Virus record (IMG/VR): IMGVR_UViG_3300020471_000004
Coordinates: 124,001-188,000 of that record
DNA: 64,000 nucleotides
Reading direction: 5' to 3' (one strand)
The notes below the pieces were generated by a model. The model saw nothing but the letters and a program-made list of their open reading frames with translations, did not search any database and was not told the origin of the DNA. Below are positions 10,306 to 32,350 of this stretch, in pieces. The first letter of the stretch is position 1. Each line of letters starts with the position of its first letter. The position numbers and the translations under genes were made by a program.

Positions 10306-13118
10306 TGGGCAAGCAAACTAACTTTAGAAACGTTTTTACTGGCCCTAATGTATTTTTCTCGGCAACTTGCCTGACTGGAAATACCCAGCTGATGAAAGTA
10401 GTAGAAGCATTTAAGATAGATAAAGATGCCTCTCACTTCTTTACGGTCAGTGTTAGAGATTTTATTGATAACGAAGACGGAGGTTACTTCCGGTATTCTT
10501 TCTCTATATCTAAGGTACTTGTTCAATATATTCAACAGGTAACAGACTCTCCCTATAAAGATATTATGAAGGAGTTCCATACTTTATTTAAGCAATGGGC
10601 TGTATGTGTGAATTTAAGCTCTAGCTTAACAGATGCCGTAGCTATAGTGGTTGAAGATAAGACTATTTGTATCGATGTTATTGACCAGTCTCATGTAGAG
10701 CAGTACTTTCCTGAAAGCAGCACAGGGTACAAAGCGTATCTGAAAGGCAGACGGTTAGAATACAGCCGTCCAAACAATCCTATTGTTAGCGAGTTTATGG
10801 CAATGTATCTTGTAAGTACTGGTGCTACTACAAGGTACGATTTAGAGAAAACTCCTTACTATAACGGCGCTTCTTTACATGCTTTCTTTTGGTCAAGCAT
10901 ACAAGAAGATGCAATGTCTATTAGTGATATGGTCAAAACCCGCGCCCAGAGCATAATTGAAATGGCGGCACTTATAGTCAAGTACTCTGTAGATGCTGGT
11001 TTAAGTGAGCAAGACCATTACGAACAGGAAGTAGAAAACTTACTTCAAAAGTCCAAGCTGGTTATAGATGAACAAGGCACAACTGTAGCTGAACGTCTAT
11101 ATACCAAAGCGTTTGAGATGATAGACCTCAATGAAGTGGTGCCTGTTAAAGTGCTTTCTCAGTATCTGCCCCCTGAAAGTATTGCATTTTTTGCCGCTTG
11201 CTCCATGCAATGGGAACTGGAAGATGATTACGACTTTGAAGAAAGCGTAGACTTTTTAACTGAACAAGCAGTAACCTTTTCTAACCATCTTAGATTAGAA
11301 GACGCAACTAGGAAAAATGATATGGACAATATACCTACTACCAGTGATTTAGATAACGAACATCCTTTAGATCAGTCTGAAAAAGCTCTTGACCTAGACA
11401 CCGCTAAATCTGTACTGACTGAAAAATTAGGTTTCACAGACCGAGTGGTGTCTAAAATGACAGATGAAGAAGTTCTCCAAGCCGTTGAACGCAATACGCC
11501 TTATAAAGAAGTTGCAGAGAAAGACACGCAACCGAGCGAACCTTTTACGATGTATAAAAGAGAGATTATTGCCAAGAATCTTACGTTTTTTCAGCCTTCT
11601 AACATAGAGCTGTTTTCAGATTTGCGTATGAAGGCAACGGCATTGTGTGTTGCACCTAATGTAGTTTTAGCAGACAATATACCTAAACACTTGCAGTCAG
11701 GTGACCAAGGTGCGTATCAAGATTGTGTTTTTGAAACCTTCTTAAATCTAATAGAGCCTTTAGGTTTTGGCACTCTTTCAACTCGAAAAGAATTCACTAG
11801 CCTAAGTAGCCGTTTGAACACGTTGCGAAAGCCTGTTATTGCTAACGCTCAAAAGTCTTACAAGTTGCCTAAAAACGTTACAGATATAATCTGCCCTAGA
11901 GATAATCAAGACCTTACTTTTGAAAACTTGTTAGAGGCATTCGCTTGGGTATTTCCGACAAGACAGGGAAATAGCTTTGAAGGTTACACCCTTCTAGGCG
12001 AACAAGTGGTAAAGGTATTTTCAGATCCAAATAGCGCAGGCGGTCTTTCTTATGAAGATGCCTTTACTTTAGCTTTTATGTTAACAGGTTTCTACGCTGC
12101 GGTAGATTTCAAAATATATGGTAACGCACTTGTAACAGAGCAAGATTTTCAATGTGTACTTCGAAGTATAGCCTTTATGTCTTTGTATTTATACCATATT
12201 GCTTATGGTAACTCAGAGCTGAAACCTGAAAGGTTTGAATATAAACATATAAGGTGTGTAAAGGCGATATTGCTTTCCTCTGGATTGAAAGAGCAACTTC
12301 ATGTTACGTCTCGCTCATTCCGTACAAAAGAGTTTGAAGATCTAGAAGAAGGCTACTCTGAACATCTTAATAAATTTATTGATTTTAGTCCTTTGTACGC
12401 CGAGTTTGCAAACACTTTTAACCTTGCACAGGACTTCAATATAGAAGACTACATAAGGCAGTTTATCTCAAGCTTTGATTTGCTAAAATTCAAGTCTCTT
12501 GAATCCGAAGAAGCACCTAAAGGGAAAGGTAACCCTTTCCCTGCTTACTTGTCGGAGTATATATATACTGACCGAGATACAAAAAGTTTAGACAAGAAAC
12601 TTAAAATTACCGGAAAGAGATTCCCAAGAGCTATTTCTGATGAAGATAAAATATTTGCGCTAAACATGGTTCGCTATGCTGCAAAAAACCTTGTTATAAA
12701 TGACGTAAAAGAGTTCTTGCACGATCTAGAAGACTACGATGACGGTAAGCTAGGTCTTATGGGAATTGCATTCGGAGTATCAAAGAAAAACACTTCCGAA
12801 GAAGAGACATTTGAGAGACTCTGGCATCATTTTAAGTTACCTGCAGATGAAATAAGCCTAGAGCTAGAAGATGAAGAGGGTTGTTGCGGTGAAGATGGTT
12901 GTGAGTGTGATGAATACACCGAGACTAATGAATTCCAAGAGCCTGTTGTTGCGAAAACCGAGGAACCTGCTGTTATTAAAGGTGGACCTAAGGAAAAGGA
13001 ATCTGTTTCCTCAGAAGTAATACGTTTGTCTCTATGGAAAGAAAAGGTCCTTTCTCTGAAACAATTGGCTGTAATGAGTGACGACTCTGTTCGCACTATT
13101 TACGAAAATATGCTTTAA
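10305..13118 (+). CDS. Large acidic hypothetical protein carrying two short T/SxxxLxxMSDE helical modules
   Basis: 937-aa ORF; modules at T378 and S917. Confidence 0.85.
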   Translation: MGKQTNFRNVFTGPNVFFSATCLTGNTQLMKVVEAFKIDKDASHFFTVSVRDFIDNEDGGYFRYSFSISKVLVQYIQQVTDSPYKDIMKEFHTLFKQWAVCVNLSSSLTDAVAIVVEDKTICIDVIDQSHVEQYFPESSTGYKAYLKGRRLEYSRPNNPIVSEFMAMYLVSTGATTRYDLEKTPYYNGASLHAFFWSSIQEDAMSISDMVKTRAQSIIEMAALIVKYSVDAGLSEQDHYEQEVENLLQKSKLVIDEQGTTVAERLYTKAFEMIDLNEVVPVKVLSQYLPPESIAFFAACSMQWELEDDYDFEESVDFLTEQAVTFSNHLRLEDATRKNDMDNIPTTSDLDNEHPLDQSEKALDLDTAKSVLTEKLGFTDRVVSKMTDEEVLQAVERNTPYKEVAEKDTQPSEPFTMYKREIIAKNLTFFQPSNIELFSDLRMKATALCVAPNVVLADNIPKHLQSGDQGAYQDCVFETFLNLIEPLGFGTLSTRKEFTSLSSRLNTLRKPVIANAQKSYKLPKNVTDIICPRDNQDLTFENLLEAFAWVFPTRQGNSFEGYTLLGEQVVKVFSDPNSAGGLSYEDAFTLAFMLTGFYAAVDFKIYGNALVTEQDFQCVLRSIAFMSLYLYHIAYGNSELKPERFEYKHIRCVKAILLSSGLKEQLHVTSRSFRTKEFEDLEEGYSEHLNKFIDFSPLYAEFANTFNLAQDFNIEDYIRQFISSFDLLKFKSLESEEAPKGKGNPFPAYLSEYIYTDRDTKSLDKKLKITGKRFPRAISDEDKIFALNMVRYAAKNLVINDVKEFLHDLEDYDDGKLGLMGIAFGVSKKNTSEEETFERLWHHFKLPADEISLELEDEEGCCGEDGCECDEYTETNEFQEPVVAKTEEPAVIKGGPKEKESVSSEVIRLSLWKEKVLSLKQLAVMSDDSVRTIYENML

Positions 13119-13124
13119 AGTTTC

Positions 13125-13186
13125 GCCTGCTTCACCGTTTTAAAACCTCTCCCCTTGTCATCGGTGGTGTGAAGCAGGCTTTTTTA
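13125..13186 (+). terminator. Intrinsic terminator with large loop
   Basis: GCCTGCTTCAC (13125-13135)/GTGAAGCAGGC (13169-13179) followed by TTTTTT. Confidence 0.7.
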
Positions 13187-13188
13187 TT

Positions 13189-13200
13189 AAAAGTGTAAAC
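13189..13200 (+). promoter_or_regulatory. Class-II motif variant AAAAGTGTAAAC
   Basis: One mismatch to AAAACTGTAAAC; intergenic, just after a terminator. Confidence 0.4.
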
Positions 13201-13393
13201 ATGTATTAGCCGTATAAATAGGAAAGTACATGAGTGTTCACAAGCAAAAACCGCTTCTTAAACTTTTGAAAAGACGATACTAGTTATTCTGTATAGAGCA
13301 CGGAGTGTATGAAGTTGCCTTGTCTAGTTTGACTTGGTCTACTAACCGTGCTGAAAAGGTATTAAACTACTGTTGTTAAAGGGAAATTCGTAG

Positions 13394-14017
13394 ATGAAAA
13401 GTAAATTACCTTCACATATAATTAATGCGATAAATGCAGTTCACATTCGTATAGATACTTCTGAATTTGAAACAACTCTCCGAAGTCTAGGTACGTCCTT
13501 AAGCAACCTAACAAGTGTCGCGTATGGCTTAGACAGTTACGTAAATACAAAAGACTTGCAGTGGATTGCCAGCAGAGAACAATCTATACAACAAGGCATC
13601 GATACTTATGTAGAAGCTATTTCAAAGTTTGTGTCTTTGAAATCAAAAGTTCCTTATGATGATGTTTACCAAGAGCTTGAGAAACAAAAGCAATCTATTT
13701 TAGAAGGCAAACCTATATACGATACTGTACAGTACTTGCTGACTTTAAAGAATATTCCGTCTACGGGGCACTGTATTATTCCGCATGAAGCTTTCACCTA
13801 TCCTGTAAAAACTATTCATCGCCTTTGGGTAGCGTACCCTGAGTTTAAATACGGTGACGTACCAGAGCACCGTCGTAATGCTTTCTTGGAAGATAAAGGT
13901 CACGACTGGAATTTATCAAGCCGAGGAATCTCTTACTCCGGTATACTTCGCAATTATGGTGAAGATGGTAAAGGTAGTGGTAGGTTACTTATAGAGTATA
14001 AAGTAAAACGGGCATGA
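13394..14017 (+). CDS. Hypothetical protein
   Basis: 207-aa ORF; AAGGGA upstream. Confidence 0.7.
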   Translation: MKSKLPSHIINAINAVHIRIDTSEFETTLRSLGTSLSNLTSVAYGLDSYVNTKDLQWIASREQSIQQGIDTYVEAISKFVSLKSKVPYDDVYQELEKQKQSILEGKPIYDTVQYLLTLKNIPSTGHCIIPHEAFTYPVKTIHRLWVAYPEFKYGDVPEHRRNAFLEDKGHDWNLSSRGISYSGILRNYGEDGKGSGRLLIEYKVKRA

Positions 14018-14153
14018 AAGTGTTAAATATATTTTTTAATTGGTACCGTTCCCCTGTAAATCCAATGTGTTGGTATGATGTGCGAACGTTTCTTGGTAAG
14101 TGTTTTGTCTGGTTTGTTTTAGCTCTAATCAATTATTTAATCTAGGAGAAATT

Positions 14154-14669
14154 ATGTCACATAAAGTACATGGTGCTACGGAATTCAGAAACGAAAATGG
14201 TTTGTACAAAAAAGGATTGTGTCCTGATAACTGTGACCCTTCTTACTTTGAAAGCAGAACTCATAGGCAGTTGGCAAAGCTTGAACTCGAAAGCTGGTTT
14301 CAAAACGGCTGTAACGGTTTCTTTCTTATCAAAGAAGAAGGCTACCCTCACCAGTTGCCTAATAGCCCTAATCGTCTAGGTCTTGATTGGATTTTTGTAG
14401 AGATAGACTTCTCTAACATGCGCGAAATAATGAAGTTCATCGGTCTTGACCCGAAACGTCTAGAAGAAGAAATGAATTTCTTTATGGGAGGTGATACCTT
14501 TATATTCAAAGACACCTCAGGTAATGACATTGAACTTGGTCCTGAAACTGATTGGAAATCAAGCCAGTGTTTTGTAATGAAGAACGAACAAGGTTGCTAC
14601 ATGATGACCTTGCAAATGTTTAAAAATGTATTCGGAGATTATGATGGGACTAAGAAGACTACTGCGTGA
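14154..14669 (+). CDS. Hypothetical protein
   Basis: AGGAG RBS before ATG 14154. Confidence 0.7.
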   Translation: MSHKVHGATEFRNENGLYKKGLCPDNCDPSYFESRTHRQLAKLELESWFQNGCNGFFLIKEEGYPHQLPNSPNRLGLDWIFVEIDFSNMREIMKFIGLDPKRLEEEMNFFMGGDTFIFKDTSGNDIELGPETDWKSSQCFVMKNEQGCYMMTLQMFKNVFGDYDGTKKTTA

Positions 14670-14871
14670 AGAACGTGAGCTAGAAGAAGACGTTGACCAT
14701 TACAAGTATCGCATAGAGGAGTGCGATGATGATTCTCTAGAAACTTTAGAGAGTGCAAAAAGCACAGATGACCGCCTGTTAAAGGTTCGCCGTCAGATTG
14801 TTAATGTGATGGAAAGTAACCTAGAGCGTAGACAAAATTGGTTGCGTAAACACGGGAGAAAAAAGAAATGA
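14641..14871 (+). CDS. Small coiled-coil hypothetical protein
   Basis: GGAG before ATG 14641; ATGA overlap downstream. Confidence 0.55.
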   Translation: MMGLRRLLREERELEEDVDHYKYRIEECDDDSLETLESAKSTDDRLLKVRRQIVNVMESNLERRQNWLRKHGRKKK

Positions 14872-15104
14872 TTGTGTTCAAACTGCCTGTTATCTTGATA
14901 TGCATGTTGCTTGCTTTGGTTTCTACCGTATTCAAAGTTACTGTAATAACTTTCTTCTTCTGTTTGTTTATTTGGTTCGAAGGTTCACCTAGCCCTGGTA
15001 CTAACATTTACCAAGACGTATCTTTTGCCAAAGACTACAACAAGCTTAAAGGCGTTTTTAAATCAGTATATAGCTGGTTCTTAAATGAGGTAAAGTCTAT
15101 ATGA
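14868..15104 (+). CDS. Small membrane protein
   Basis: 78 aa; long hydrophobic N-terminal half. Confidence 0.6.
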   Translation: MIVFKLPVILICMLLALVSTVFKVTVITFFFCLFIWFEGSPSPGTNIYQDVSFAKDYNKLKGVFKSVYSWFLNEVKSI

Positions 15105-15322
15105 AGTTATTTTCTTATACTGGACAAGGCGTATCTAACGGCTGCTTTGTACTTGTTACAGCGCGAAGCGATTTAACTGCTGCTAAACTAGTACGCAAAA
15201 AACTAACAGATTTAGGTCTAGAGACTTCAAAATCTTTGTTAGACATTCGCCAAGCTTTAACGCCCGTAATGGAATCACTTGATTCACCAGCTGTTATCTA
15301 CTACGACAACGGAGACTACTAA
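15101..15322 (+). CDS. Small hypothetical protein
   Basis: 73 aa; GAGG RBS; ATGA overlap. Confidence 0.65.
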   Translation: MKLFSYTGQGVSNGCFVLVTARSDLTAAKLVRKKLTDLGLETSKSLLDIRQALTPVMESLDSPAVIYYDNGDY

Positions 15323-15323
15323 A

Positions 15324-15818
15324 ATGAAATTTGCACAAGGAAATGATTGGTTAAACGGCGGTAAAGGTTTTACCAAGGAAGATCTTGACCAACTAGTCAA
15401 ACAAAGCGAGACTAAAGAGTGCAGTATGGATGAGGTTCTGGCAGGTGGTGACGAAGCCGCATCCAAAGAGGTTATTGCCTCTCTTTTAAAACGTATCGAT
15501 GAGCTAGAGGCCCAGCTTGTATCGGGCCCTAAAAAGATTGAAAGTGCTGATTACCACTCTATTACTTGGACAATAGCTACAGACAAGAAAACTCCTCAGG
15601 CAGGGGAACAAGCTGTTAGTCTTTTGGTCACTGCGGTAGAGAATGCTTATGCCAAGTATTTCAAATCTACTATGTTCGGAAAGCTTTTAGCCAAAGGTCG
15701 ATACTGCGGGGCTGTTAATACTATCGAGCTATCTTCTCCTACAGTAGTAGACGGCGAGTTTAAAGGAATTTACGACAACTTAATCCTTTCTAATGTCAAG
15801 AACAGAGATATTTTGTGA
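15324..15818 (+). CDS. Hypothetical protein
   Basis: GGAG before ATG 15324. Confidence 0.7.
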   Translation: MKFAQGNDWLNGGKGFTKEDLDQLVKQSETKECSMDEVLAGGDEAASKEVIASLLKRIDELEAQLVSGPKKIESADYHSITWTIATDKKTPQAGEQAVSLLVTAVENAYAKYFKSTMFGKLLAKGRYCGAVNTIELSSPTVVDGEFKGIYDNLILSNVKNRDIL

Positions 15819-16327
15819 TTATAGCAGGCACTGGACATAGACCTAATAAACTAGGAGGCTATGACCAGCAAAACTTTCATAACCTAGTTAAGTTCGCAGG
15901 TGTTCGTCTTGTGCAACAAGAACCTGATTTAGTTGTTTCAGGTACAGCTTTAGGGTGGGATATGGCACTTTTGGTAGCGGCCCGTAAACTAGATTACCGA
16001 GTCCAGGCTGCTGTACCTTTTGAAGGGTTTGATAAAAACTGGCACTACGGTACTAGGCAGTTTTGGAATGCTTGGGTAGAGTCTTGTTCTGAGGTAGTGG
16101 TATTAAAAGATTTAGGGCAAGACTTCCAGTACTATGATGTAGTTAAAGCCCTTGACGAGCGTAATCGTTATATGGTTGATATGTCTGACAGCATGATGGC
16201 TTTATGGAACGGCACAAAAGGAGGTACTGCTAACTGCATACGTTATGCCCAGAATCGCAAAGTGGTTGTTGAAAACCATTGGTATTATTGGGAACGCTCT
16301 AGATTCAATAAGGACCGAATATGTTAG
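15815..16327 (+). CDS. SLOG-superfamily (YspA/DUF1273-like) protein
   Basis: AGTGHRP, VVSGTALGWD, AAVPFEG, RNRYMVD and WNGTKGGTANCIRYA motifs. Confidence 0.8.
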   Translation: MIIAGTGHRPNKLGGYDQQNFHNLVKFAGVRLVQQEPDLVVSGTALGWDMALLVAARKLDYRVQAAVPFEGFDKNWHYGTRQFWNAWVESCSEVVVLKDLGQDFQYYDVVKALDERNRYMVDMSDSMMALWNGTKGGTANCIRYAQNRKVVVENHWYYWERSRFNKDRIC

Positions 16328-16869: not shown

Positions 16870-16878
16870 GGAATTACC

Positions 16879-22195: not shown

Positions 22196-22744
22196 ATGTT
22201 ATCAACCTATTCTTTAATAGTGGAAAACCAGGACTTGTTTTCTGCTCAAATTGCACAGGAAGTTTTTGGAGACGTAATAGCAGGTAACAATCCTAATCAA
22301 GTTATAGTAATTACTGATACCTCGCTGCGGAGGAAAGAGCTTACTTCAAACGCGTTTACTTGTTTAGGCGGCTTTGGTTTATTCGCGTCTTTCTTGGATC
22401 TAGACAGGTCTTTTCTAGAGAAAGACGCCGCTAGACCTGCTTTGGTTGCTTGCGCAAACCATGTAGCTAGCGGGTATGACTTTATTAAAGCAGGGCTAAC
22501 AAATTTTTATTTTATAGCTCCTCCTAGATGGACTACTTTGTATGAGCAAAGTAAGCTTGAAGCACACCTTGTGTCCAAGAACTCTATGTTATTGCATTTA
22601 ATGAGCAAGCTTGACCGACCGAGTGTTTTCGATTTTGAAGATATTTCTTTAACAATCGTCTGCAAGGACAAGCGAGTGTACGATATTGTAAAGAAGTGGG
22701 TAGACGATAAAAAGTATATACTATCTTCTAAAGGAGAATTATGA
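22196..22744 (+). CDS. Hypothetical protein
   Basis: 182-aa ORF; ATGA overlap with uvsE. Confidence 0.7.
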   Translation: MLSTYSLIVENQDLFSAQIAQEVFGDVIAGNNPNQVIVITDTSLRRKELTSNAFTCLGGFGLFASFLDLDRSFLEKDAARPALVACANHVASGYDFIKAGLTNFYFIAPPRWTTLYEQSKLEAHLVSKNSMLLHLMSKLDRPSVFDFEDISLTIVCKDKRVYDIVKKWVDDKKYILSSKGEL

Positions 22745-23757
22745 AAATAGGATTTGCATGTAAGTACTTTCATCCTGACCGAACTTTGCCTGCCAAAGCT
22801 CTCAAAGAGGAAGAACAAAAATACAACTTTAAATCTACTACTGCAAAATGGTTAAAGGATAACCCTAAACTTGCCTACAAGCGGTTAGAAGAAATTTGTA
22901 TCTACAACGCCGAATGTGTGGTTCGTTTAGTAGACCTGGTTAGTAGCTGGGCCGTGCCGCTAAGAATGTTACGCATAGGGAGCGATGTACTCCCTATGTA
23001 TACCCACAAAGATTTCAGAACTTTCTACAAAAAAGCCCCCTTTATGCAAGAAGTGGAAAACTTACTTGCAGCCGCAGGTCATCGTGCGAGAGCTGCAGGC
23101 GTCAAACTCTCAATGCACCCTGGTCAATTTTGTGTACTTGCTTCTACCAAGCCTGATGTGATTGCCAATTCAATAGAAGAATTCGAGTACCACGTAGACG
23201 TTATCCGAATGATGGGCTACGCCAAGTCTAAACTTGATTTCAAGTGCAATGTCCATCTTTCAGGTGCAGGTGGTGCCGACAAATTCCTATCTACTTACCA
23301 AAAGCTTTCAACCGAAGCCCGCCGCGTTATCACTTTAGAGAATGACGAGTACACCTCCGACCTAAACGACCTGCTGCCTCTAGCAGACTATGTAGGTATC
23401 GTGCTTGATATTCACCACTACTGGATATACAACCATTCTTTTATCTCCTCACAAGACCCTAGACTTGAAATAATAGAGCAATCTTGGCAAGGCAGGCGTC
23501 CCACTATTCATTACTCGTACAGCCGAGAAGAGCATTTAAAAGGTCTTACTGGCACAAAGCCTGACCTGAATGCTCTTGTATATTCAGGCATCCCTAAGTC
23601 TAAACTAAGAGCACATTCTGATAGTTATCCTAATCCTGCAATGAATAGGTATGCACTGGAGTTTCTGCCTCAATTTGATATTATGTGCGAAGCCAAGAAC
23701 AAGAATGAAGCAAGCACACTCCTATACAAGCAGGCGGTACGCGTAGGTGTACTCTAA
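22741..23757 (+). CDS. uvsE: UV damage endonuclease (UvsE/UVDE)
   Basis: MKIGFAC, RMLRIGSD, LSMHPGQF, EFEYH, ITLENDE, VLDIHH, AHSD and DIMCEAKNK motifs. Confidence 0.92.
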   Translation: MKIGFACKYFHPDRTLPAKALKEEEQKYNFKSTTAKWLKDNPKLAYKRLEEICIYNAECVVRLVDLVSSWAVPLRMLRIGSDVLPMYTHKDFRTFYKKAPFMQEVENLLAAAGHRARAAGVKLSMHPGQFCVLASTKPDVIANSIEEFEYHVDVIRMMGYAKSKLDFKCNVHLSGAGGADKFLSTYQKLSTEARRVITLENDEYTSDLNDLLPLADYVGIVLDIHHYWIYNHSFISSQDPRLEIIEQSWQGRRPTIHYSYSREEHLKGLTGTKPDLNALVYSGIPKSKLRAHSDSYPNPAMNRYALEFLPQFDIMCEAKNKNEASTLLYKQAVRVGVL

Positions 23758-24369: not shown

Positions 24370-24380
24370 AAGGAATTAAA

Positions 24381-25428: not shown

Positions 25429-25438
25429 GTTATAAGCT

Positions 25439-25462: not shown

Positions 25463-25468
25463 GACGTA

Positions 25469-25545: not shown

Positions 25546-25594
25546 GACAGCATACAAACTTTCGTTAAACAAACAAACTTAAAGGAAATTCAAA

Positions 25595-27439
25595 ATGGCT
25601 AAAGTTCAAACAAACGAAGCAATGGTTGGTAAGCGCATCAAACTAGAAGATGGCAGCCGTGTTAAAATCCTAGAAGCACAGGCTTCTGGTTACAAACTAT
25701 CTAACGGTGACCGATTACCTGCTCGTAAAGTTGAAAAGCGCGGTCGCAGTTTTATCGAAACTGATCTTACTATGCGTGACCTAGAAGATACAGGTGAAGG
25801 TTATGTTGTTAAGCCTGGTTCTGAGGAAGCATCACCTAAGAAATCAGCCACGCGCAATAAAACAACTGGTAAGAAGAAAACTACCAGCAAGAAAAAAGAA
25901 ACAGGTCGTACAACTCGCAACTCTAAAACCAAAACCAAAACCAAAACCAAGTCTAAGTCAAAAACAAAAGACTCGGAAGAGACGCGTACTAATCGTAAGA
26001 CTAAAACCACGCGTAACAAAAAGAAAGACGATGCCCCGTCTTCTAAAAAGACCGTTTCGCGCCGCCGTACTAAGGCGAAAGAAGAAAAGGTTGAAACTAA
26101 GCCAGCTCGTAACCAAGAAGTCGAGTTGAAAAACAAGTCTCAGATGGAAAAAATTCAAACAGCTATTCGTTTAGCTGTCGGTGAGATCTTAGCGCCTTAC
26201 ACAAACATTGATAGTCAGAGCACTTGTTTGATGGCTAATCCTCCGAAGAGCGCGTTCTCGGTAACGATTGAAGTTAAAACTTCTCTAGTTAAGCCTGAAC
26301 ACCACAGCCTAAGCTATTACAAAGCAATTGCTAAGGAAGCAGGTGCTCGAATCATTACGCTTAAACCTAATATTCAGGCAAAGATTGCAGAACGCCTTGA
26401 ACCTGAAGAGTCTGTACGTGATTCGTTTGTTTTAGAATACGGTGATATTCTTCTTGATGAAGACGGTACTACCAAGCTTGTTTATTCAGGTGTTAACGTA
26501 AGAGAAAATAAGTTTGTTCTGGTTAACATGTCTACCGAGCAAGTTATTGAAATCGGCTTATCAGGTTTTGATAGCCTAGATACTACTGGCGTAAACGTTA
26601 CAAGTCTAGGTATGACTATTGAAGAATACAACCAGGAACTTGAAAACGCTGCCGATGTTGATGATGACGAGTTTGCTATTGATTCCGATGAAGATAAAAC
26701 TCCGCTTGAATCTTTAGACTGGGACAACACTGACCACGAAACTTTAGTTGATTTGCTTTCGGATGTTTACACCGAAGAAGAGCTGATTGCTTTCGCAGAG
26801 CAAATGGACGCGTCCGAAGAAGAGCTTGAAGCACCGATTAGCGAGTTGATTGAAATGATCGTTGCAGCACAAAAAGAAGAGTCGGAAGACTTTGAAGACG
26901 CAGACGAAGAACCTGAGTCGGACGAGCTAGAGCTTGGTGATATTGAAATGGACGAAGATGATCTTGAAACAGAAGATGATCTAGACCTAGAGGACGCCGA
27001 AGACCTAGACGGTATAGAAGAAGTTGTCGAAAACAAACTTTCTATTCGTGAAATGGCCGCAGCGTTGATAGAGTCAGGTGACTATACGCCTAAAGGTTTG
27101 AAGCGCCTGTCTGATGATGAAATCGAGCAGGAGTATCAAGACCTAATCGGTGACCAGGAAGAAGAAGCTGAAGAGCTTCCGTCTCTTGAAGAAATGAAAG
27201 AGACTCTTCTGTCAGACGGTCAAGTAACACCTAAAGGCTTAAAGCGTATGGAAGACGAGGAGATTGAAAGTCTTTACATTGAAGTATACGGTGATGAAGT
27301 CGAAGACGACCAAGACGATGTAGATATGCTTTTCGATGCCGACTCTGTTGAAGACGAAAACGACCTTGACTTAGAAGGCGAAGATGACGATGAAGAAGAC
27401 CTAGATCTAGAAGGCGAGTTAGAGTCTGAATTTGAATAA
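25595..27439 (+). CDS. Polyampholyte protein: basic K/T-rich tract followed by very acidic C-terminal half with two TPKGLKR repeats
   Basis: 614 aa; KKKTTSKKK...KTKTKTKTK tract; D/E-rich tail; repeats at T498 and T545. Confidence 0.85.
   Translation: MAKVQTNEAMVGKRIKLEDGSRVKILEAQASGYKLSNGDRLPARKVEKRGRSFIETDLTMRDLEDTGEGYVVKPGSEEASPKKSATRNKTTGKKKTTSKKKETGRTTRNSKTKTKTKTKSKSKTKDSEETRTNRKTKTTRNKKKDDAPSSKKTVSRRRTKAKEEKVETKPARNQEVELKNKSQMEKIQTAIRLAVGEILAPYTNIDSQSTCLMANPPKSAFSVTIEVKTSLVKPEHHSLSYYKAIAKEAGARIITLKPNIQAKIAERLEPEESVRDSFVLEYGDILLDEDGTTKLVYSGVNVRENKFVLVNMSTEQVIEIGLSGFDSLDTTGVNVTSLGMTIEEYNQELENAADVDDDEFAIDSDEDKTPLESLDWDNTDHETLVDLLSDVYTEEELIAFAEQMDASEEELEAPISELIEMIVAAQKEESEDFEDADEEPESDELELGDIEMDEDDLETEDDLDLEDAEDLDGIEEVVENKLSIREMAAALIESGDYTPKGLKRLSDDEIEQEYQDLIGDQEEEAEELPSLEEMKETLLSDGQVTPKGLKRMEDEEIESLYIEVYGDEVEDDQDDVDMLFDADSVEDENDLDLEGEDDDEEDLDLEGELESEFE
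25925..25948 (+). repeat. (AAAACC)4 in-frame hexamer repeat
   Basis: Encodes KTKTKTKT. Confidence 0.7.
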
Positions 27440-27460
27440 GCCTGTACACCGGAGATAGAT

Positions 27461-27838
27461 ATGTCAGATCTAAAACCGATGTTTATAGGAACGTTTTATA
27501 GTCTTTTAGTCAGGTCTGCAATGTCTAGCGAGGAAGGGTATGTAACAGTACCCGACCTTTCTAAGCAGATAAACATACTACCGAATCGTGGAAACGAGCT
27601 AGGTAAAATTGTTAACCAGACGCTTAAAGAAATTGCTACGTTTGAACACAAGCATAACCGACCTATGTTAACAGCACTGGTCTGCAAACAAGACAAAGCA
27701 AGCGGTTCTTTTTACCCTAGCGATTGGTTCTATGTTTGTGCAGAGCAATTAGGCTACAATGTTCCTAAAACACCAGAAGGGAAGTTACAATTCTGGCGTG
27801 CTGAATTTGAAAAAGTTCACGCATACTGGTCTATATAG
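27461..27838 (+). CDS. Small putative winged-helix DNA-binding protein
   Basis: GGAG RBS; RPMLTALVCKQ...YPSDWF...FWRAEFEKVHAYW pattern recalls small wHTH domains. Confidence 0.55.
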   Translation: MSDLKPMFIGTFYSLLVRSAMSSEEGYVTVPDLSKQINILPNRGNELGKIVNQTLKEIATFEHKHNRPMLTALVCKQDKASGSFYPSDWFYVCAEQLGYNVPKTPEGKLQFWRAEFEKVHAYWSI

Positions 27839-27846
27839 GAGTTACT

Positions 27847-29223
27847 ATGTCTTATACTCGAGTATATGACGATGTGGATATGGATGCAATGCGCTCCTTG
27901 GTTCACGCTAGAATTTTACATCCGTCTGAATCAAAACTTGAGGGTACAGCATTGTCTGTACCTATTACACTGTTTGGTGAAGCTTACAAAAACACCAGGA
28001 CAGTAGAGCTTAGATTAAGCAAAACCTATCTAAGACAACTGGTTAATAAAGCAGCCGAAGGCTATGACCGTGCTACTTGTGAAACAATCAGCTTGTTATA
28101 CAGAGCAGGTTTAGGTTTGCCGAAATCTAAAGAATGTCATTTGCTATGGGACGTACTCCGAAGCGGGTATCAACCTAAAGTAAATGGTAAGATATTTTCA
28201 TATACAAATATGGTTTATATCTTAAAGCAACACTGGAAGATTTTGAGAGTAGAGAACAAAGATCCTAATTGGGTATACTTTAGTCCTCAAAATGATTTTT
28301 TCCGAAATCTTCTGCAACCTACGTTTAGCACTTACGTAAATGATAAGTTTGTAGCCAAGCGTAAACCTTTTGGTGTGTTTGCAAAATACGCAGGTATTGA
28401 TTGTACTCTTGTGTACAGAGCAAATTCACAAACAGGTGAAGGTACGTTTTGGGCAGCCTATGCAAAAGTACAGGACACTTTATTAAATGTCACTGCACAG
28501 GTAGCATGTTGTCCTAATATACCTAAAACTATAATTAACTCTAAGTTGAGTTCGTTTAGTCCTTTCTTTATGGTGAACGGTACATTAACTGTAAAGAATA
28601 GAGCGTTTAGAAAGCTTTCTAAATACTGGCAGCAAAATAATGTACTAGGTCTAATACGTGCAAGTCTAGACCAGGACATTTACTCGTTGGCAGAGTTTGC
28701 AGGAAGGGATTTACCTTCTAAGCATCCTTCGAAAAGCTTTGTAGATCGTTATCGCGGTAAATATCGTAAAGCAACAAAGTTTGTTGATTCGTTTAGAGGC
28801 AAACGTCCTAATCGAACCGATAGCCGTAGGTTAGAAAAGGCTCAGCATCTAATAGATACGTTTAACACCCATGCTATTGTTGTTGACCAAGCTAAAGAGC
28901 ACCGACAGGAATTAAAGCAATACGATATTGTAGATAACCTACAGTTCGTTGCGTATGACTTGTACGGATACTTATCAGAAGATTCTGATAGTTCTAGGTG
29001 CTTGCGAATACGTACCCCTTACGATAAGGTGCATAGCTTTATCAAAGAAATGGGATTCAATACAGCCGTTATGTGCAAACCTTTAAGTAAGCAAAAGGCA
29101 TGTGTTGACCGTGTAACAAGCACTGTACTTCCAGGCTTCATTATGAAAGGCTTGGTTTACAAGCTAGCTGAAAATTCAGCCGGCTCTGATTTAAACTGGG
29201 TTAAAGTTAAACTAGGAGACTAA
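27847..29223 (+). CDS. Sel1-like repeat fused to a degenerate NAD+-dependent DNA ligase adenylation domain
   Basis: KYAGIDCTLVY (motif I), NVTAQVACCPNIPKTI, FMVNGT (III), LQFVAYD (IIIa), KGLVYK (IV); no OB/Zn/HhH/BRCT domains. Confidence 0.55.
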   Translation: MSYTRVYDDVDMDAMRSLVHARILHPSESKLEGTALSVPITLFGEAYKNTRTVELRLSKTYLRQLVNKAAEGYDRATCETISLLYRAGLGLPKSKECHLLWDVLRSGYQPKVNGKIFSYTNMVYILKQHWKILRVENKDPNWVYFSPQNDFFRNLLQPTFSTYVNDKFVAKRKPFGVFAKYAGIDCTLVYRANSQTGEGTFWAAYAKVQDTLLNVTAQVACCPNIPKTIINSKLSSFSPFFMVNGTLTVKNRAFRKLSKYWQQNNVLGLIRASLDQDIYSLAEFAGRDLPSKHPSKSFVDRYRGKYRKATKFVDSFRGKRPNRTDSRRLEKAQHLIDTFNTHAIVVDQAKEHRQELKQYDIVDNLQFVAYDLYGYLSEDSDSSRCLRIRTPYDKVHSFIKEMGFNTAVMCKPLSKQKACVDRVTSTVLPGFIMKGLVYKLAENSAGSDLNWVKVKLGD

Positions 29224-29224
29224 T

Positions 29225-30625
29225 ATGTCTAATCAAGATAACCAGCAAAATACTTCTGAAAACACTAATGTAGTAGAGCCCACTTCTGTTGAAACGGTTG
29301 TAGAGCAAACAACTGAACAGGAAACTGTAAACAATACGCAGAACACAAGTTCTACCGAAACCGAATCACTTACAAAGGATAGCGAAATGAGTAGTGAAAG
29401 CGAAAAGTTACGTCAACGTCAAATCAATGCAGGTATGTCACCTACTGATCAGGCCCGCGAAGAAATGATTAAAGAGCAAGAACAAAGAACAGGCGCTCCT
29501 AATCCTGCACCTCAAGTTGAATCGACTGTGCAAGAGCCGGTTACTGTTTCTCAAACAGAAAACGTTTCTGAAAATGTTTCGTTTGAATCTGAAATGCCTG
29601 TGCAAGAAGTCGAGTTAGCTTCGGCGCGCCCAATGTTTTCTGATTTGTTTGTTCCAGATTCGATGGAACTGTACACTTCTAACATTCGTTTGCACCTGGT
29701 TATTCCTGTTGCGTCTACTAGCATTCTATCTAAGAAGGTTAAGACAGTAGAAGTTGGTGACCAAGAATTCAATATTCGTAACACCTTGGCGCGACCTGTT
29801 AAAGGTAAGCCTGCAGGTCTTATGTTTAATGCGCTAAACGAGCTGCTGTCTACCGCAGACACTTATAACAACCAGCGTTTCTATTACGCAGGTGATGCGC
29901 TTACTCTTGAAAACATGAAAAGCGGACTGTGCGCCCGTCTAACAGACTTTGTTGCAGGTCTTGATTTAGCAGGCGGTCTTTCTAATGAATCTTGGGAAGA
30001 GCAAGTAGGTTTTGCACCTAGCGTTTCAATTACTCCTAGCTTTGACAGCGATGAGCTAATTGTTTCAATGGTTGTTCCGTTTCCTCTACTTTCAATGACG
30101 CCGGATAAACTTGAAACTTCGGCACAGGTAGAAGACTTCATTGTTAAACGTATCGTTGGCGATTCTAACATCAAAGTAGATATAAGTTACGCAATCAACA
30201 CCGTCGATGCAATCATTGACGAATCTGTAAACGAATTGGTGAACGGTCTTGTTGGTGAATCGGATTACGTTCTTGCCACTGACGCGGATCTAATTAGTTT
30301 CTACACTAGCCTGGAAGAAGGCGAAGACGAAGACTTTGATTATAGCGAAGACGAAGGCGAAGATTTTGATTCAGATGAAGATTCGGACGATGACGACCTA
30401 GAATCTGAAGGTGAAGATTCAGACGATGATGACCTTGAGTTAGAAGGTGACGAAGTAGATACAATCGACCTTGGTTATGTGCCGCATAACTCGCTTGCAG
30501 GTCTTGAAGCGCAATTGCGTTATTCTAACATTGGTGACCAATCATTTATCTTGGTTAGCAAATGTGTAAACGAGCTAGAAGATTTAGACTTATCTGGCGC
30601 CGAGCAAGAAGAGTCAGAAGACTAA
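29225..30625 (+). CDS. Acidic protein with disordered N-terminus and D/E-rich tail
   Basis: 466 aa; T/E/Q/S-rich N-terminus; DEDSDDDDLE repeats. Confidence 0.8.
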   Translation: MSNQDNQQNTSENTNVVEPTSVETVVEQTTEQETVNNTQNTSSTETESLTKDSEMSSESEKLRQRQINAGMSPTDQAREEMIKEQEQRTGAPNPAPQVESTVQEPVTVSQTENVSENVSFESEMPVQEVELASARPMFSDLFVPDSMELYTSNIRLHLVIPVASTSILSKKVKTVEVGDQEFNIRNTLARPVKGKPAGLMFNALNELLSTADTYNNQRFYYAGDALTLENMKSGLCARLTDFVAGLDLAGGLSNESWEEQVGFAPSVSITPSFDSDELIVSMVVPFPLLSMTPDKLETSAQVEDFIVKRIVGDSNIKVDISYAINTVDAIIDESVNELVNGLVGESDYVLATDADLISFYTSLEEGEDEDFDYSEDEGEDFDSDEDSDDDDLESEGEDSDDDDLELEGDEVDTIDLGYVPHNSLAGLEAQLRYSNIGDQSFILVSKCVNELEDLDLSGAEQEESED

Positions 30626-30636
30626 AAACTGTAAAC
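30625..30636 (+). promoter_or_regulatory. Class-II motif AAAACTGTAAAC
   Basis: Exact 12-mer overlapping the upstream stop. Confidence 0.55.
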
Positions 30637-30694
30637 TTTATTTGAATATACTAATTAAGTAGTTCAAGATTAATTTTGTATTTGGAGAAACATC

Positions 30695-31219
30695 ATGCGT
30701 AAAACAAAAGCACCGGCAAAGAAAGGCGCTGCTCGTAAAGGTAAGAAAACAGGAACAGCAGTTGCTCGTCCTAGCGGTGCAACACGCAATAGCCGTCTTG
30801 CTAAGTTTGAAGGCAAAATCAACAAGCTTGGTACAGACAAAGTTTCAACCAAAGCTTTAGCGGGAATGAAAGCTTCGGTAGTTGTATCGGCACCTGGTCA
30901 AATCGCTCAGATTATCGGTTACATGGTAGCCGCTGATGAAGACACTGTTACCTTGCGTACTAACAAGAAATCAGGTTCTTCTAAGCCTGTAATCAAAGTT
31001 ATCCCACGCAAACGTATTGCAGCATCTATCGGTGCACCTGGTGACAACTGTATCCTTTGGGTACAAGAGCAAAAAGAAATGTTTGTTCTTAAAGAAACAA
31101 CTGTAAAGGTTGAAGGCAACACTGCTTTCGTTACAGACCTTAAAACAGGCGGTGACGTTATTGAGTTCCCTCTTAACAATCCGCTTGTTGATGTAGCAAT
31201 CGAGTATATGGAAGACTAA
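30695..31219 (+). CDS. Basic-tailed protein with possible Sm/SH3-like beta-barrel
   Basis: GGAG RBS; MRKTKAPAKKGAARKGKK tail; VVVSAPG..IIGYMVAADEDTVTL...VIPRKRIAAS. Confidence 0.75.
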   Translation: MRKTKAPAKKGAARKGKKTGTAVARPSGATRNSRLAKFEGKINKLGTDKVSTKALAGMKASVVVSAPGQIAQIIGYMVAADEDTVTLRTNKKSGSSKPVIKVIPRKRIAASIGAPGDNCILWVQEQKEMFVLKETTVKVEGNTAFVTDLKTGGDVIEFPLNNPLVDVAIEYMED

Positions 31220-31240
31220 GGTCTTCCTTCTCACAAAACA

Positions 31241-31252
31241 AAAACTGTAAAC
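31241..31252 (+). promoter_or_regulatory. Class-II motif AAAACTGTAAAC
   Basis: Exact 12-mer in the intergenic gap. Confidence 0.55.
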
Positions 31253-31303
31253 ATATTTCGTAACATAACGTTAGACTAAAAACACCTTATTAAGGATACA
31301 ATA

Positions 31304-32350
31304 ATGCGTAAATCAAAATCAGCCGCTAAAAAGACTCAAACTAATGCAGCAGTAGAGCTTCTGAAAACCCTTCTTGTCGGTCTTCAAGATGCTGCTAACG
31401 ATGGTGACGAGTCTTGTGCTGCGATTCTAGAACATGCTGGTGTTACCGCTGATTCTCAGGCAGCCTTAGAAGAAGCCGAAGAAGATGAAGATGAAGATGA
31501 CGAAGATGAAGACGTTGACCTCGAAGAGCTTTCTCTTAAAGAGCTGAAAGCACTTTGTAAAGAGCGTGGAATCAAAGTACCTCGCGGTGCTGACGAAGAC
31601 GCCTTAATCGAGCTTCTTGAGGAAGAAGAAGACGAGGAAGACGAAGAAGACGAGGCTGAGGAAGAAGAAGGTCTTGACGAAGAAGAGCGCGAAGAGCTAA
31701 TCGCTGACCTTGTTGCTGCCAAGATCAAAGGTCTTACAAAAGCCAAGTTGAAGAAAATGTCGGACGAGCAACTGCAAGAGCTTGAAGAAGAGCACTTGGG
31801 CGAAGACGAAGACGAAGACGAAGCTGAAGAAGACGGTGATGACTTGGAAGAGCTTTCTCTTAAAGAGCTTAAAGCGCTTTGTAAAGAACGCGGCATTAAA
31901 GTACCACGTGGTGCCGATGAAGAAAAGCTAATCGAGCTTCTTGAAGATGAAGAAGACGAAGAAGAAGGTGACGAAGAAGACGAGGAAGACGGTGACGATG
32001 TTGACCTTGAAGAGCTTTCTCTTAAAGAACTTAAAGCCCTTTGCAAAGAACGTGGTATTAAAGTTCCGCGCGGCGCAGATGAAGAAGATCTAATCGAGCT
32101 TCTTGAAGACGAAGACGAAGAAGAAGACGAAGAAGACGAGGAAGACGAAGACGATATTCCAGATCTTGATTCAATGTCTGACAAAGAGCTTATCGCTTTA
32201 GCCAAAGAGCTTAAACTTGTTAAAGGCGCAAAAGCTAAAAAGCTGAGTGTTGAAGATGCGCTTGAACTTCTTGCTGACCACTACGATATTGAAATCGAAG
32301 CCGAAGACGAAGAAGATGAAGACGAAGACGAGTGGGGCGAAGACGACTAA
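31304..32350 (+). CDS. Extremely acidic protein with three or four HeH (Rho-N/LEM/SAP-like) modules
   Basis: 3x DLEELSLKELKALCKERGIKVPRGADExxLIELLE plus degenerate LDSMSDKELIALAKEL, separated by poly-D/E linkers. Confidence 0.85.
   Translation: MRKSKSAAKKTQTNAAVELLKTLLVGLQDAANDGDESCAAILEHAGVTADSQAALEEAEEDEDEDDEDEDVDLEELSLKELKALCKERGIKVPRGADEDALIELLEEEEDEEDEEDEAEEEEGLDEEEREELIADLVAAKIKGLTKAKLKKMSDEQLQELEEEHLGEDEDEDEAEEDGDDLEELSLKELKALCKERGIKVPRGADEEKLIELLEDEEDEEEGDEEDEEDGDDVDLEELSLKELKALCKERGIKVPRGADEEDLIELLEDEDEEEDEEDEEDEDDIPDLDSMSDKELIALAKELKLVKGAKAKKLSVEDALELLADHYDIEIEAEDEEDEDEDEWGEDD
31517..32107 (+). repeat. Three 105-nt coding direct repeats (31517-31621, 31841-31945, 32003-32107)
   Basis: Near-identical GAAGAGCTTTCTCTTAAAGA cores. 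Confidence 0.9.

What the first reader, a model, noticed from the sequence alone, without database searches (positions are those of the whole stretch)
11436..31800. One short helical module shared by three unrelated acidic proteins
Seen in sequence: the pattern [T/S]xxx[L/V]xx[M/L][S/T/E]D[D/E]x[I/V/L] occurs five times. These are TDRVVSKMTDEEV (ORF10305, T378), SLKQLAVMSDDSV (ORF10305, S917), TPKGLKRLSDDEI and TPKGLKRMEDEEI (ORF25595, T498 and T545), and TKAKLKKMSDEQL (ORF31304, T145). Most sit inside or beside acidic, probably disordered stretches. Inference: a mobile two-helix docking module that recruits these proteins to a common partner (RNAP, a scaffold or a replication hub).
Basis: partly seen in the sequence, partly recalled or inferred. 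Interest (0 to 1): 0.6.

Follow-up and report, generated by a model that had tools for sequence, protein, structure and literature searches.

The report
Divergent HeH/SAP-like mini-domain in phage proteins
Three of the five motif copies belong to a real, conserved helical mini-domain of about 38 residues, probably a divergent relative of SAP/HeH tethering domains, that sits on acidic linkers in unrelated jumbo-phage proteins; the two copies in the third protein are unproven and no binding partner is known.

Summary
All five motif matches are at the stated residues, and they are the only matches in the 232.7-kb phage genome. The phage is an NCTB-like marine member of the 'Lupandier' jumbo-phage group.

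The two copies in ORF25595 and the one in ORF31304 are real. They form a ~38-aa unit: helix, then a basic [S/T]xKxxLKK turn, then a helix starting MSD[D/E]E[I/L].
- The unit is conserved in the orthologues of Phage NCTB, Dickeya phage AD1 and Yersinia phage fHe-Yen9-02.
- A profile of the three window copies finds 13 clusters among 1.84 billion proteins, on at least five otherwise different proteins.
- AlphaFold with a 19-sequence alignment gives a confident three-helix fold (pLDDT 86.5).

The two ORF10305 copies fail. Profiles built without them score them at noise level (5.1 and 3.0 bits).

ORF31304 is a five-unit array with a 54-aa period. Units 1, 3 and 4 are canonical SAP repeats, unit 2 is the module and unit 5 is intermediate. 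NCTB has modules where this phage has SAP units. I therefore read the module as a divergent HeH (SAP/LEM/Rho_N-like) domain on polyacidic linkers. The ligand is unknown. This is a new variant of a known kind, of moderate interest.

The parts
25595..27439 (+). ORF25595 (P0002, 614 aa). It has a conserved ~70-aa N-terminal domain, a K/T/S-rich basic stretch (about +28 net over aa 80-160), a central domain, and an acidic C-terminal half that carries modules C and D.
   Evidence: Orthologues are in Phage NCTB (42% identity over aa 4-423, syntenic), Erwinia, Dickeya and Yersinia jumbo phages. phrog_33433 matches the N-terminus.
27038..27154 (+). Module C (P0002 aa 482-520): helix, basic turn TPKGLKR, then a helix starting LSDDEI.
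   Evidence: 66.9 bits with profile A7, which contains this copy, and 18.3 bits with a profile built only from other phages. phrog_6184 at E 1.7e-5. AlphaFold with alignment A7 gives pLDDT 86.5 with helices at aa 484-494, 499-503 and 507-523.
27179..27295 (+). Module D (P0002 aa 529-567), a tandem copy of C 47 aa downstream.
   Evidence: C versus D pairwise z = 17 against shuffles. 21.0 bits with the profile built from other phages only. Both copies are kept in the NCTB orthologue and in P0018 and P0020.
31304..32350 (+). ORF31304 (P0003, 348 aa, 43% D+E). After a conserved N-terminal helical domain it is a five-unit array with a 54-aa period, the units separated by polyacidic linkers.
   Evidence: TRF finds a 162-bp DNA repeat at 31802-32155. 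phrog_30618 and SAP-type PHROGs match.
31682..31804 (+). Module E (P0003 aa 127-167), which is unit 2 of the array.
   Evidence: 46.3 bits with the profile built from other phages only. 13.5 bits (E 8.6e-4) with a profile of the ORF25595 family alone. It is the orthologue of the middle module of the NCTB protein P0005. Its predicted helices lie in phase with those of the SAP units.
31517..31627 (+). Array unit 1: canonical SAP/Rho_N-type repeat (P0003 aa 72-108).
   Evidence: Pfam SAP 2e-9 (37.3 bits against a cut-off of 23.9) and Rho_N 2.7e-7 for the whole protein. Individual units are detected. pLDDT 81-88.
31841..31951 (+). Array unit 3: canonical SAP-type repeat (aa 180-216).
   Evidence: Core identity to unit 1 is 94%.
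32003..32113 (+). Array unit 4: canonical SAP-type repeat (aa 234-270).
   Evidence: Core identity to unit 3 is 97%.
32162..32284 (+). Array unit 5: terminal HeH unit (aa 287-327), intermediate between the SAP units and the module.
   Evidence: Core identity is 47-50% to the SAP units and 42% to module E. Shuffle p is <=3e-4 against SAP and 0.0017 against E. It gives a weak Rho_N hit and matches the SAP-type PHROGs. In P0019 a module occupies this position.
10305..13118 (+). ORF10305 (P0001, 937 aa, pI 4.8), an orphan protein with no family assignment.
   Evidence: No significant Pfam or PHROG match. No tblastn match in 50,697 phage records. Besides the window's own sequence (P0011, 100% identical), the only homologue in 5.8 billion sequences is P0012, 79% identical. 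No atlas lead.
11388..11504 (+). Site A (P0001 aa 362-400): motif match, membership unproven.
   Evidence: 3.0 bits, E 1.9. hhalign score 22.9, probability 6.9%, 37 columns. The amphipathic pattern is kept through conservative changes in P0012.
12999..13115 (+). Site B (P0001 aa 899-937, the extreme C-terminus): motif match, membership unproven.
   Evidence: 5.1 bits, E 0.4. hhalign score 22.7, probability 6.4%, 39 columns. The last 38 aa are 100% identical in P0012, although the acidic, Cys-rich linker before them is deleted there. Weak DUF5415 hit, below the cut-off.
30695..31219 (+). Conserved upstream neighbour of ORF31304 (P0030, 174 aa; basic N-terminus followed by a region that looks beta-rich by eye).
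   Evidence: phrog_22271. The same position is occupied in AD1 and fHe-Yen9-02.
32448..32963 (+). Conserved downstream neighbour of ORF31304 (P0029, 171 aa): helical N-terminus, histone-H1-like A/K-rich basic repeats, and an acidic-aromatic C-terminal tip (EFDFEA).
   Evidence: Equivalent genes with tips DFDFEME and EFEFDV follow the orthologues in AD1 and fHe-Yen9-02.

Best explanation
The motif is the most conserved part of a ~38-residue mini-domain. The domain is an amphipathic helix (consensus ..EM...L[IV]e.G), a short basic turn or helix ([YVL][TS]xKxLKK), and a second long helix that starts with an N-cap box ([ML]SD[DE]E[IL]..[LA]Y). The window holds three demonstrable copies: two in tandem near the C-terminus of ORF25595 and one as unit 2 of the five-unit array of ORF31304.

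I read the domain as a divergent member of the helix-extension-helix (HeH: SAP/LEM/Rho_N-like) class. In these jumbo phages such units are strung on long polyacidic, disordered linkers. Each unit keeps a small conserved basic patch in an otherwise very acidic protein. The likely mechanism (inferred, not shown) is a weak, multivalent tether. The units would hold the acidic carrier proteins on a polyanionic or repetitive target, most plausibly DNA or the nucleoid during infection, or less likely a shared protein surface. The acidic linkers would then act on basic DNA-binding proteins such as the histone-H1-like protein encoded next to ORF31304.

Shown: the copies, their conservation, their spread over unrelated proteins, the predicted fold, and the exchange with SAP units. 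Inferred: membership of the HeH class, the ligand and the biological role. The two ORF10305 sites are at best very distant copies and may simply be chance amphipathic helices with the common S/T-x-x-E capping box.
For: 1. Conservation. The NCTB orthologue of ORF25595 keeps both modules while the acidic linkers differ in length and sequence. The AD1 and fHe-Yen9-02 orthologues end in one module at the extreme C-terminus.

2. Profiles find copies they were not trained on. The profile of alignment A1 finds copies in the AD1 and Yen9-02 orthologues of ORF31304 (E 9e-15 to 1.7e-6) and in a third AD1 protein, P0010 (3.8e-4). A profile built without any window sequence recovers E, D and C at 46, 21 and 18 bits, while noise stays at or below 7.5 bits.

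3. Wider spread. A profile of C, D and E against 1.84 billion representatives gives 13 hits at E <= 1e-3. They include a membrane protein, two small acidic proteins, a 337-aa protein next to DnaB and DnaG, and a JAB-like protein with four copies in a non-acidic setting.

4. Fold. AlphaFold with alignment A7 gives mean pLDDT 86.5 and pTM 0.62, with a helix, short helix, helix arrangement.

5. HeH link.
- ORF31304 is a 54-aa-period array in which the module (unit 2) and its predicted helices are in phase with the SAP units.
- NCTB and P0019 carry modules at positions where this phage has SAP or HeH units.
- There is a chain of composition-corrected similarities: SAP to unit 5 (p <= 3e-4), unit 5 to E (p 0.0017), E to C (p <= 3e-4).
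- C aligns without gaps to a SAP unit, matching E.G...P[KR]G, and that SAP unit is the best non-self hit in the genome for C.
- The module profile's next-best hits in this genome are the SAP units (12.4 and 11.4 bits, E 0.002-0.004, full length).
- hhalign of A2 against a SAP/HeH alignment gives probability 66%, E 5.7e-5, 37 columns in register.
- Single members give weak hits to SAP (0.0015), LEM (0.0028) and Ish1 (0.018).
- Whole-domain structural matches include Rho residues 4-48 (Z 4.7), the MANF and CDNF SAP-like domains (Z 4.5, 4.0), SAP domains 1h1j, 2do1 and 1zrj (Z 3.6-3.8), the emerin LEM domain (3.6) and the T4 endonuclease VII C-terminus (3.6).
Against: The Pfam SAP, Rho_N and HeH models do not detect C, D or E even at E <= 10. 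No Pfam family reaches its cut-off on any module.

hhalign of the independent alignment A7 against the SAP/HeH alignment gives only 4.6% probability, and in a different register: the last helix of the module pairs with SAP helix 1.

Structural Z scores of 3.6-5.1 are in the range that any short helical hairpin reaches. Unrelated folds (TFIID, CheA, designed repeats) score as well or better. Foldseek finds nothing significant in the PDB.

The modules are net acidic (-3 to -7), which is unusual for a DNA-binding SAP domain. The SAP units of this protein are also net acidic by my residue count. No ligand was tested. If the SAP units entered ORF31304 by recombination, positional exchange would show functional equivalence rather than common descent.
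Confidence: 0.55

Rival explanations
1. One reading: the module is a protein-protein docking unit that brings all its carriers to one common protein partner (RNAP, scaffold or replication hub), whatever its fold ancestry.
For: The unit occurs on unrelated proteins, at termini or on flexible acidic linkers, as docking modules typically do. It is net acidic, which fits protein binding better than DNA binding. Some HeH-type domains do bind proteins: the structural hits include the MANF and CDNF SAP-like domains solved in complex with the BiP nucleotide-binding domain, and LEM binds BAF (my own knowledge). One carrier lies next to DnaB and DnaG, and the window carriers lie among DNA-metabolism genes (UvdE, gyrase B).
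Against: No partner has been identified. No complex prediction was run because there was no rational candidate. The carriers found in other metagenomic phage contigs do not share an obvious conserved partner gene. The most conserved exposed residues are lysines, and arrays of up to five units suggest a repetitive or polymeric target.
Confidence: 0.25
2. All five sites, including the two in ORF10305, are copies of one module, as the reader listed them.
For: In a genome-wide hhalign scan with a profile that excludes them, sites A and B are the two best non-family hits and align over 37 and 39 of about 47 columns. Both exceed all 600 random windows in global mode. Site B sits at the extreme C-terminus after a variable acidic linker and is 100% conserved in the only homologue. 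The AD1 and Yen9-02 orthologues of ORF25595 carry their module in the same position.
Against: The scores sit at the top of the noise, not above it: 22.9 and 22.7 against 21.2 and 18.7 for unrelated sites, with probabilities of 6-7%. hmmsearch gives E 0.4 and 1.9. Leave-one-out profiles miss both sites. A and B are not similar to each other (z = -0.5). The sites were chosen by eye for this very motif, so their rank is biased. The core [ML]S.[DE]E[IL] is a common helix N-cap pattern that also gives weak hits to unrelated families such as RPAP1_N.
Confidence: 0.35
3. The motif is a chance product of acidic, helix-prone composition and there is no real module.
For: The pattern was written after the fact from five strings. 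The leave-one-protein-out test using window sequences alone is weak (3-10 bits). D/E/K/L-rich helices easily produce S-D-[DE]-x-[ILV].
Against: For C, D and E this is excluded by conservation across four phages inside otherwise unalignable acidic linkers, by profile scores 40-60 bits above noise, by copies found in proteins outside the training set, by four copies in a non-acidic protein (P0024), and by a confident fold.
Confidence: 0.03

Closest known systems
SAP domain (Pfam PF02037) and the HeH class of helix-extension-helix motifs (LEM, HeH, Rho_N, Ish1); that these families form one class is from my own knowledge of Pfam clans
   Same: Size is about 35-40 aa. There are two main amphipathic helices joined by a short conserved Gly- and Lys-containing connector. 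Units are often terminal or repeated on flexible linkers. In ORF31304 and its orthologues the module and canonical SAP units occupy equivalent array positions. Sequence, profile and structure links are weak but consistent.
   Different: The Pfam SAP, Rho_N and HeH models do not detect the module. The connector is longer by 2-6 residues and is predicted as a short helix. The last helix opens with a strongly conserved MSD[DE]E[IL]..[LA]Y signature that SAP lacks. The unit is net acidic.
N-terminal helical subdomain of transcription terminator Rho (PDB 1a62, residues 4-48; Pfam Rho_N PF07498)
   Same: It is the best whole-domain HeH-type structural match (Z 4.7, rmsd 2.7 A, 43 residues). From my memory of the E. 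coli Rho sequence it has the same G-[LF]..L.+M...[DE][IL] spacing; I did not check this against a sequence here.
   Different: No significant sequence match for C, D or E. In Rho the subdomain is part of a fixed RNA-binding domain, not a repeat on acidic linkers.
phrog_6184 (63-position phage protein family of unknown function) and phrog_30618
   Same: phrog_6184 aligns with module C over profile positions 10-52 (E 1.7e-5), and three of the 19 module sequences hit it. phrog_30618 is hit by five of the 19 and appears to be the ORF31304 family.
   Different: Neither family has a known function or a curated threshold. phrog_6184 does not detect D or E in this genome.
SHOCT-type short helical motifs (hh..G.[IL]T..[EG][YF])
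   Same: The first helix and turn of the module share the L[IV]..G.[YVL]T pattern. A eukaryotic PET/LIM protein with many such repeats was a marginal hit (P0027).
   Different: Only the first half matches. The MSD[DE]E helix is absent from P0027, and the SHOCT_2 hit on P0027 is weak (E 0.029). I judged this a shared turn motif, not membership.

Membership tests
The module family itself (profile of alignment A7 or A2: ORF25595-type and ORF31304-type units) | Significant full-length match to a profile built without the sequence under test | tested here: met
   For C, D and E: 18.3, 21.0 and 46.3 bits with a profile built from NCTB, AD1 and Yen9-02 only, against noise of 7.5 bits or less. The ORF25595-family profile finds E at E 8.6e-4.
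The module family itself, applied to the ORF10305 sites A and B | Significant full-length match to a profile built without the sequence under test | tested here: not met
   5.1 bits (E 0.4) and 3.0 bits (E 1.9). hhalign probabilities 6.4% and 6.9%. Not found in leave-out tests.
Pfam SAP (PF02037) | HMM score at or above the gathering threshold (23.9 bits) | tested here: not met
   No hit on C, D or E at E <= 10 in the genome-wide search or in single-segment scans. The best hit by any module in related phages is E 0.0015. Units 1, 3 and 4 of ORF31304 do qualify together (37.3 bits).
Pfam Rho_N (PF07498) | HMM score at or above the gathering threshold (24.9 bits) | tested here: not met
   Only the three SAP units are detected. 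The terminal unit 5 reaches E 0.048. There is no hit on C, D or E.
Pfam HeH (PF12949) and LEM (PF03020) | HMM score at or above the gathering threshold | tested here: not met
   HeH gives no match in the genome. LEM is hit by one related-phage module at E 0.0028, below the cut-off.
HeH fold class (helix-extension-helix) | Two antiparallel-packed helices of about 10-15 residues joined by a short conserved connector, superposable on SAP, LEM or Rho_N structures | tested here: inconclusive
   The model has helices at residues 7-17, 22-26 and 30-46 of the 47-residue model, pLDDT 86.5. Whole-domain matches to Rho_N, SAP and LEM give Z 3.6-4.7, but unrelated helical hairpins score the same. Foldseek on the PDB is not significant.
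HeH fold class | Remote sequence homology to bona fide HeH units | tested here: inconclusive
   In favour: hhalign of A2 against A3 gives 66% probability and E 5.7e-5 in register; the SAP units are the next-best hits of the module profile; there is a transitive chain of shuffle-significant pairs; and the units are exchanged position for position in orthologous arrays. Against: A7 against A3 gives 4.6% probability in another register.
HeH/SAP-type DNA-binding domains | Binding to DNA or RNA through the connector and the start of helix 2 | not testable with these tools
   The only indirect point is a conserved basic patch ([ST]xKxxLKK) inside net-acidic units.

The most novel reading that the evidence does not exclude
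The module, the SAP units and the polyacidic linkers could be parts of a phage 'chromatin-handling' system. Multivalent HeH-type tethers would hold hyper-acidic proteins on DNA. There they would load, remove or neutralise the histone-H1-like A/K-rich protein encoded next door, whose conserved acidic-aromatic C-terminal tip could be the module's docking peptide. That would be a histone plus acidic-chaperone pair in a jumbo phage group that has no known phage nucleus.
Probability: 0.1. Interest if true: 0.7.

Novelty: new variant of a known kind. Interest (0 to 1): 0.35.

Why it matters
The carrier proteins are 'hypothetical' in every genome of the Lupandier jumbo-phage group (Lu11, PaBG, NCTB, and the Dickeya, Erwinia and Yersinia phages). 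Recognising a shared, foldable unit inside sequence that otherwise looks like acidic low complexity gives these proteins a handle for experiments, such as tagging, pull-down and deletion in culturable relatives. It also adds an uncurated subfamily to the SAP/HeH class. If the units tether acidic proteins to DNA next to a histone-like protein, this would point to a way these phages organise their own or the host's DNA. On the evidence here it is a modest annotation advance, not a new mechanism.

Tried and rejected
- A profile of the five copies finds only itself, which is circular. Leave-one-protein-out profiles from window sequences alone were too weak to decide.
- tblastn of ORF10305 against 50,697 phage records found nothing. 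The word search of 5.8 billion proteins found, besides the window's own sequence, one 79%-identical homologue. The word search with the two-module region of ORF25595 found only 93-99% identical relatives.
- The search for related loci with ORF25595 in IMG/VR found nothing.
- The module profile found nothing in Pseudomonas phages Lu11 and PaBG.
- The profile search of PDB sequences gave nothing significant.
- Foldseek of the whole ORF31304 model only rediscovered the SAP units. Foldseek of the module against the PDB was not significant. The ESM Atlas and BFVD structure searches gave only non-significant or unnamed matches; the top BFVD rows probably include the NCTB orthologues and another Erwinia phage protein.
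- The protein atlas gave no lead for ORF10305 or the centre of ORF25595.
- Pfam and PHROGs name almost none of the neighbouring genes apart from UvdE and gyrase B.
I did not resend those rows and used window sequences only (alignment A5).
- The weak hits to DUF5415, RPAP1_N and SHOCT_2 were considered. I rejected them as shared helix-cap or turn motifs below the thresholds.
- P0023 and P0027 from the big search match only half of the profile, and I do not count them as carriers.
- Complex prediction was not used, because I had no partner candidate with any rationale beyond gene neighbourhood.
- Sequencing-read tools were not needed.

Full report
SETTING. The window is bases 124001-188000 of a single 232,692-bp viral contig (IMG/VR, about 93% complete, about 40% GC). 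The closest record is Phage NCTB (LT598654), which is syntenic around ORF25595 through gyrase B. More distant relatives are Dickeya phage vB_DsoM_AD1 (Alexandravirus), many Erwinia pEa_SNUABM phages and Yersinia phage fHe-Yen9-02. PMC7412058 places NCTB, AD1, the Erwinia phages Alexandra, Y3 and Yoloswag, and the Pseudomonas phages Lu11 and PaBG in one jumbo-myovirus clade, the 'Lupandier group'. It calls NCTB a Trichodesmium phage with marine metagenomic relatives. The named genes around the finding are UvdE (22741-23757) and gyrase B (33941-35974). Almost everything else is unannotated.

OBSERVATION. Within-protein shuffles give 0.04 matches (0.55 for the 9-residue core). Because the pattern was written from these strings, that number cannot stand alone. 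A profile of the five finds only itself, and leave-one-protein-out profiles made from window sequences are weak: the ORF31304 copy at 10 bits, the ORF25595 copies at about 3 bits, and the ORF10305 copies not found.

THE MODULE IS REAL IN ORF25595 AND ORF31304. The orthologues supply the missing evidence.
- The NCTB orthologue of ORF25595 (P0004) keeps two units with the same spacing of helix, turn and helix. The surrounding acidic linkers differ in length and sequence.
- The AD1 and fHe-Yen9-02 orthologues end in one unit at the extreme C-terminus.
- The NCTB orthologue of ORF31304 (P0005) has three units.
- A profile of these units (A1) then found copies it was not trained on: in the AD1 and Yen9-02 orthologues of ORF31304 (E 9e-15 to 1.7e-6) and in a third AD1 protein, P0010 (E 3.8e-4).
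- A profile without any window sequence recovers E, D and C at 46, 21 and 18 bits, with everything else at 7.5 bits or less. A profile of the ORF25595 family alone finds E at E 8.6e-4.

SPREAD. The big profile search with the three window copies (A5) found 13 clusters at E <= 1e-3 among 1.84 billion representatives. Apart from ORF25595-type and ORF31304-type proteins, they include:
- a 182-aa membrane protein with a C-terminal unit;
- two small acidic proteins;
- a 337-aa protein encoded beside DnaB and DnaG;
- a JAB-like protein with four units in a non-acidic context.
Two hits (P0023, P0027) match only half of the profile and I do not count them. ORF25595, ORF31304 and ORF10305 share nothing else.

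FOLD. AlphaFold on ORF31304 alone modelled the SAP units and the terminal unit with confidence, but module E only at pLDDT about 50-58. With the 19-sequence alignment A7, module C folds at mean pLDDT 86.5 and pTM 0.62. The helices are at P0002 residues 484-494, 499-503 and 507-523.

RELATION TO SAP/HeH. ORF31304 carries three canonical SAP/Rho_N-type repeats (Pfam SAP 2e-9). Cutting the protein into 54-residue pieces from residue 67 puts five units in register. Units 1, 3 and 4 are SAP (94-97% identical cores, 162-bp DNA repeat). Unit 2 is module E. Unit 5 is a terminal HeH unit that is 47-50% identical to the SAP cores and 42% identical to E. The predicted helices of unit 2 fall in the same phase as those of the SAP units. 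In the alignment of ORF31304 with P0005 and P0019, modules stand where this phage has SAP unit 1 and unit 5. Further links:
- composition-corrected pairwise tests give SAP to unit 5 (p <= 3e-4), unit 5 to E (p 0.0017), and E to C (p <= 3e-4);
- module C aligns without gaps to a SAP unit, which is its best non-self hit in the genome;
- the SAP units are the next-best hits of the module profile;
- hhalign of A2 against a small SAP/HeH alignment gives 66% probability in register;
- single members give weak hits to SAP, LEM and Ish1;
- the wide structural search lists Rho residues 4-48, several SAP domains, the emerin LEM domain and the T4 endonuclease VII C-terminus as whole-domain matches at Z 3.6-4.7.

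Against this link:
- the curated SAP, Rho_N and HeH models do not see the modules;
- alignment A7 against the SAP/HeH alignment gives only 4.6% probability, in another register;
- Z scores of this size are common for any helical hairpin.

I therefore file the module as 'works like and probably descends from HeH units', not as a member of any curated family.

ORF10305. The protein is an orphan. It has no family match, no match in the phage records and one 79%-identical homologue in 5.8 billion sequences. Profiles that exclude its two sites score them at 5.1 and 3.0 bits. A genome-wide hhalign scan ranks them as the two best non-family hits with near full-length alignments, but only just above unrelated sites and at 6-7% probability. 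Pairwise scans with C, D or E do not find them, and A and B do not resemble each other. Site B is at the extreme C-terminus behind a variable acidic linker and is fully conserved in the homologue. That is suggestive, but membership is unproven. I give it about one chance in three.

FUNCTION. Nothing here identifies a ligand. These facts bear on mechanism:
- the units are net acidic but keep a conserved lysine-rich turn;
- they occur singly, in tandem or in arrays of up to five on disordered polyacidic linkers;
- they are interchangeable with SAP units;
- ORF31304 is flanked, in this phage and in AD1 and Yen9-02, by a small basic protein and by a histone-H1-like A/K-rich protein with a conserved acidic-aromatic tip;
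- ORF25595 itself joins a strongly basic stretch to the acidic, module-bearing half.

My best reading is a weak multivalent tether to DNA or the nucleoid. Both are inferences.

VERDICT. This is a new variant of a known kind, with interest 0.35.

Noticed in passing
window 30695-31219, 31304-32350, 32448-32963; L008 182-2453; L012 234-2412: A conserved gene trio: a small basic protein, the hyper-acidic HeH-array protein, and a histone-H1-like A/K-repeat protein. The C-terminus of the last one ends in a conserved acidic-aromatic tip (EFDFEA, DFDFEME or EFEFDV), which looks like a short docking peptide.
   Followed up: partly
window 31802-32155: A 162-bp tandem DNA repeat (2.2 copies, 81% matches) encodes the near-identical SAP units 3 and 4. 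The NCTB orthologue has module-type units at these positions, so the SAP units look like a recent replacement or amplification within the array.
   Followed up: partly
window 25835-26080 (P0002 aa ~80-160): A K/T/S-rich, strongly basic low-complexity stretch (TKTKTKSKSK, with a 6-bp DNA repeat at 25925-25950) lies inside an otherwise very acidic protein. The first ~70 aa of ORF25595 are its most widely conserved part, 42-49% identical in the Erwinia, Dickeya and Yersinia jumbo phages.
   Followed up: partly
window 12867-12917 (P0001 aa ~855-871): An acidic, cysteine-rich stretch (five Cys within about ten residues) in ORF10305 is deleted in the only homologue, P0012. The first 180 and the last 38 residues are 100% identical, which gives a mosaic conservation pattern.
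   Followed up: no
L017 1051-1791 (Dickeya phage AD1): A third AD1 protein (P0010, 246 aa) carries one module (E 3.8e-4) and ends in what looks by eye like a separate HeH-like unit. BFVD also lists a 446-aa Erwinia phage pEa_SNUABM_5 protein with a near-perfect structural match to the module (TM 0.93, rmsd 0.9 A).
   Followed up: partly
L026 1405-3682: The metagenomic carrier P0024 combines a weak JAB/MPN-like N-terminus (Prok-JAB, E 0.006) with four modules. It lies two genes from a ThiF/E1-like gene, on a short contig of small genes that is probably phage.
   Followed up: no
window 30376-30450: A 36-bp tandem repeat (2.1 copies) encodes an acidic stretch near the C-terminus of the unannotated 466-aa ORF at 29225-30625.
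   Followed up: no
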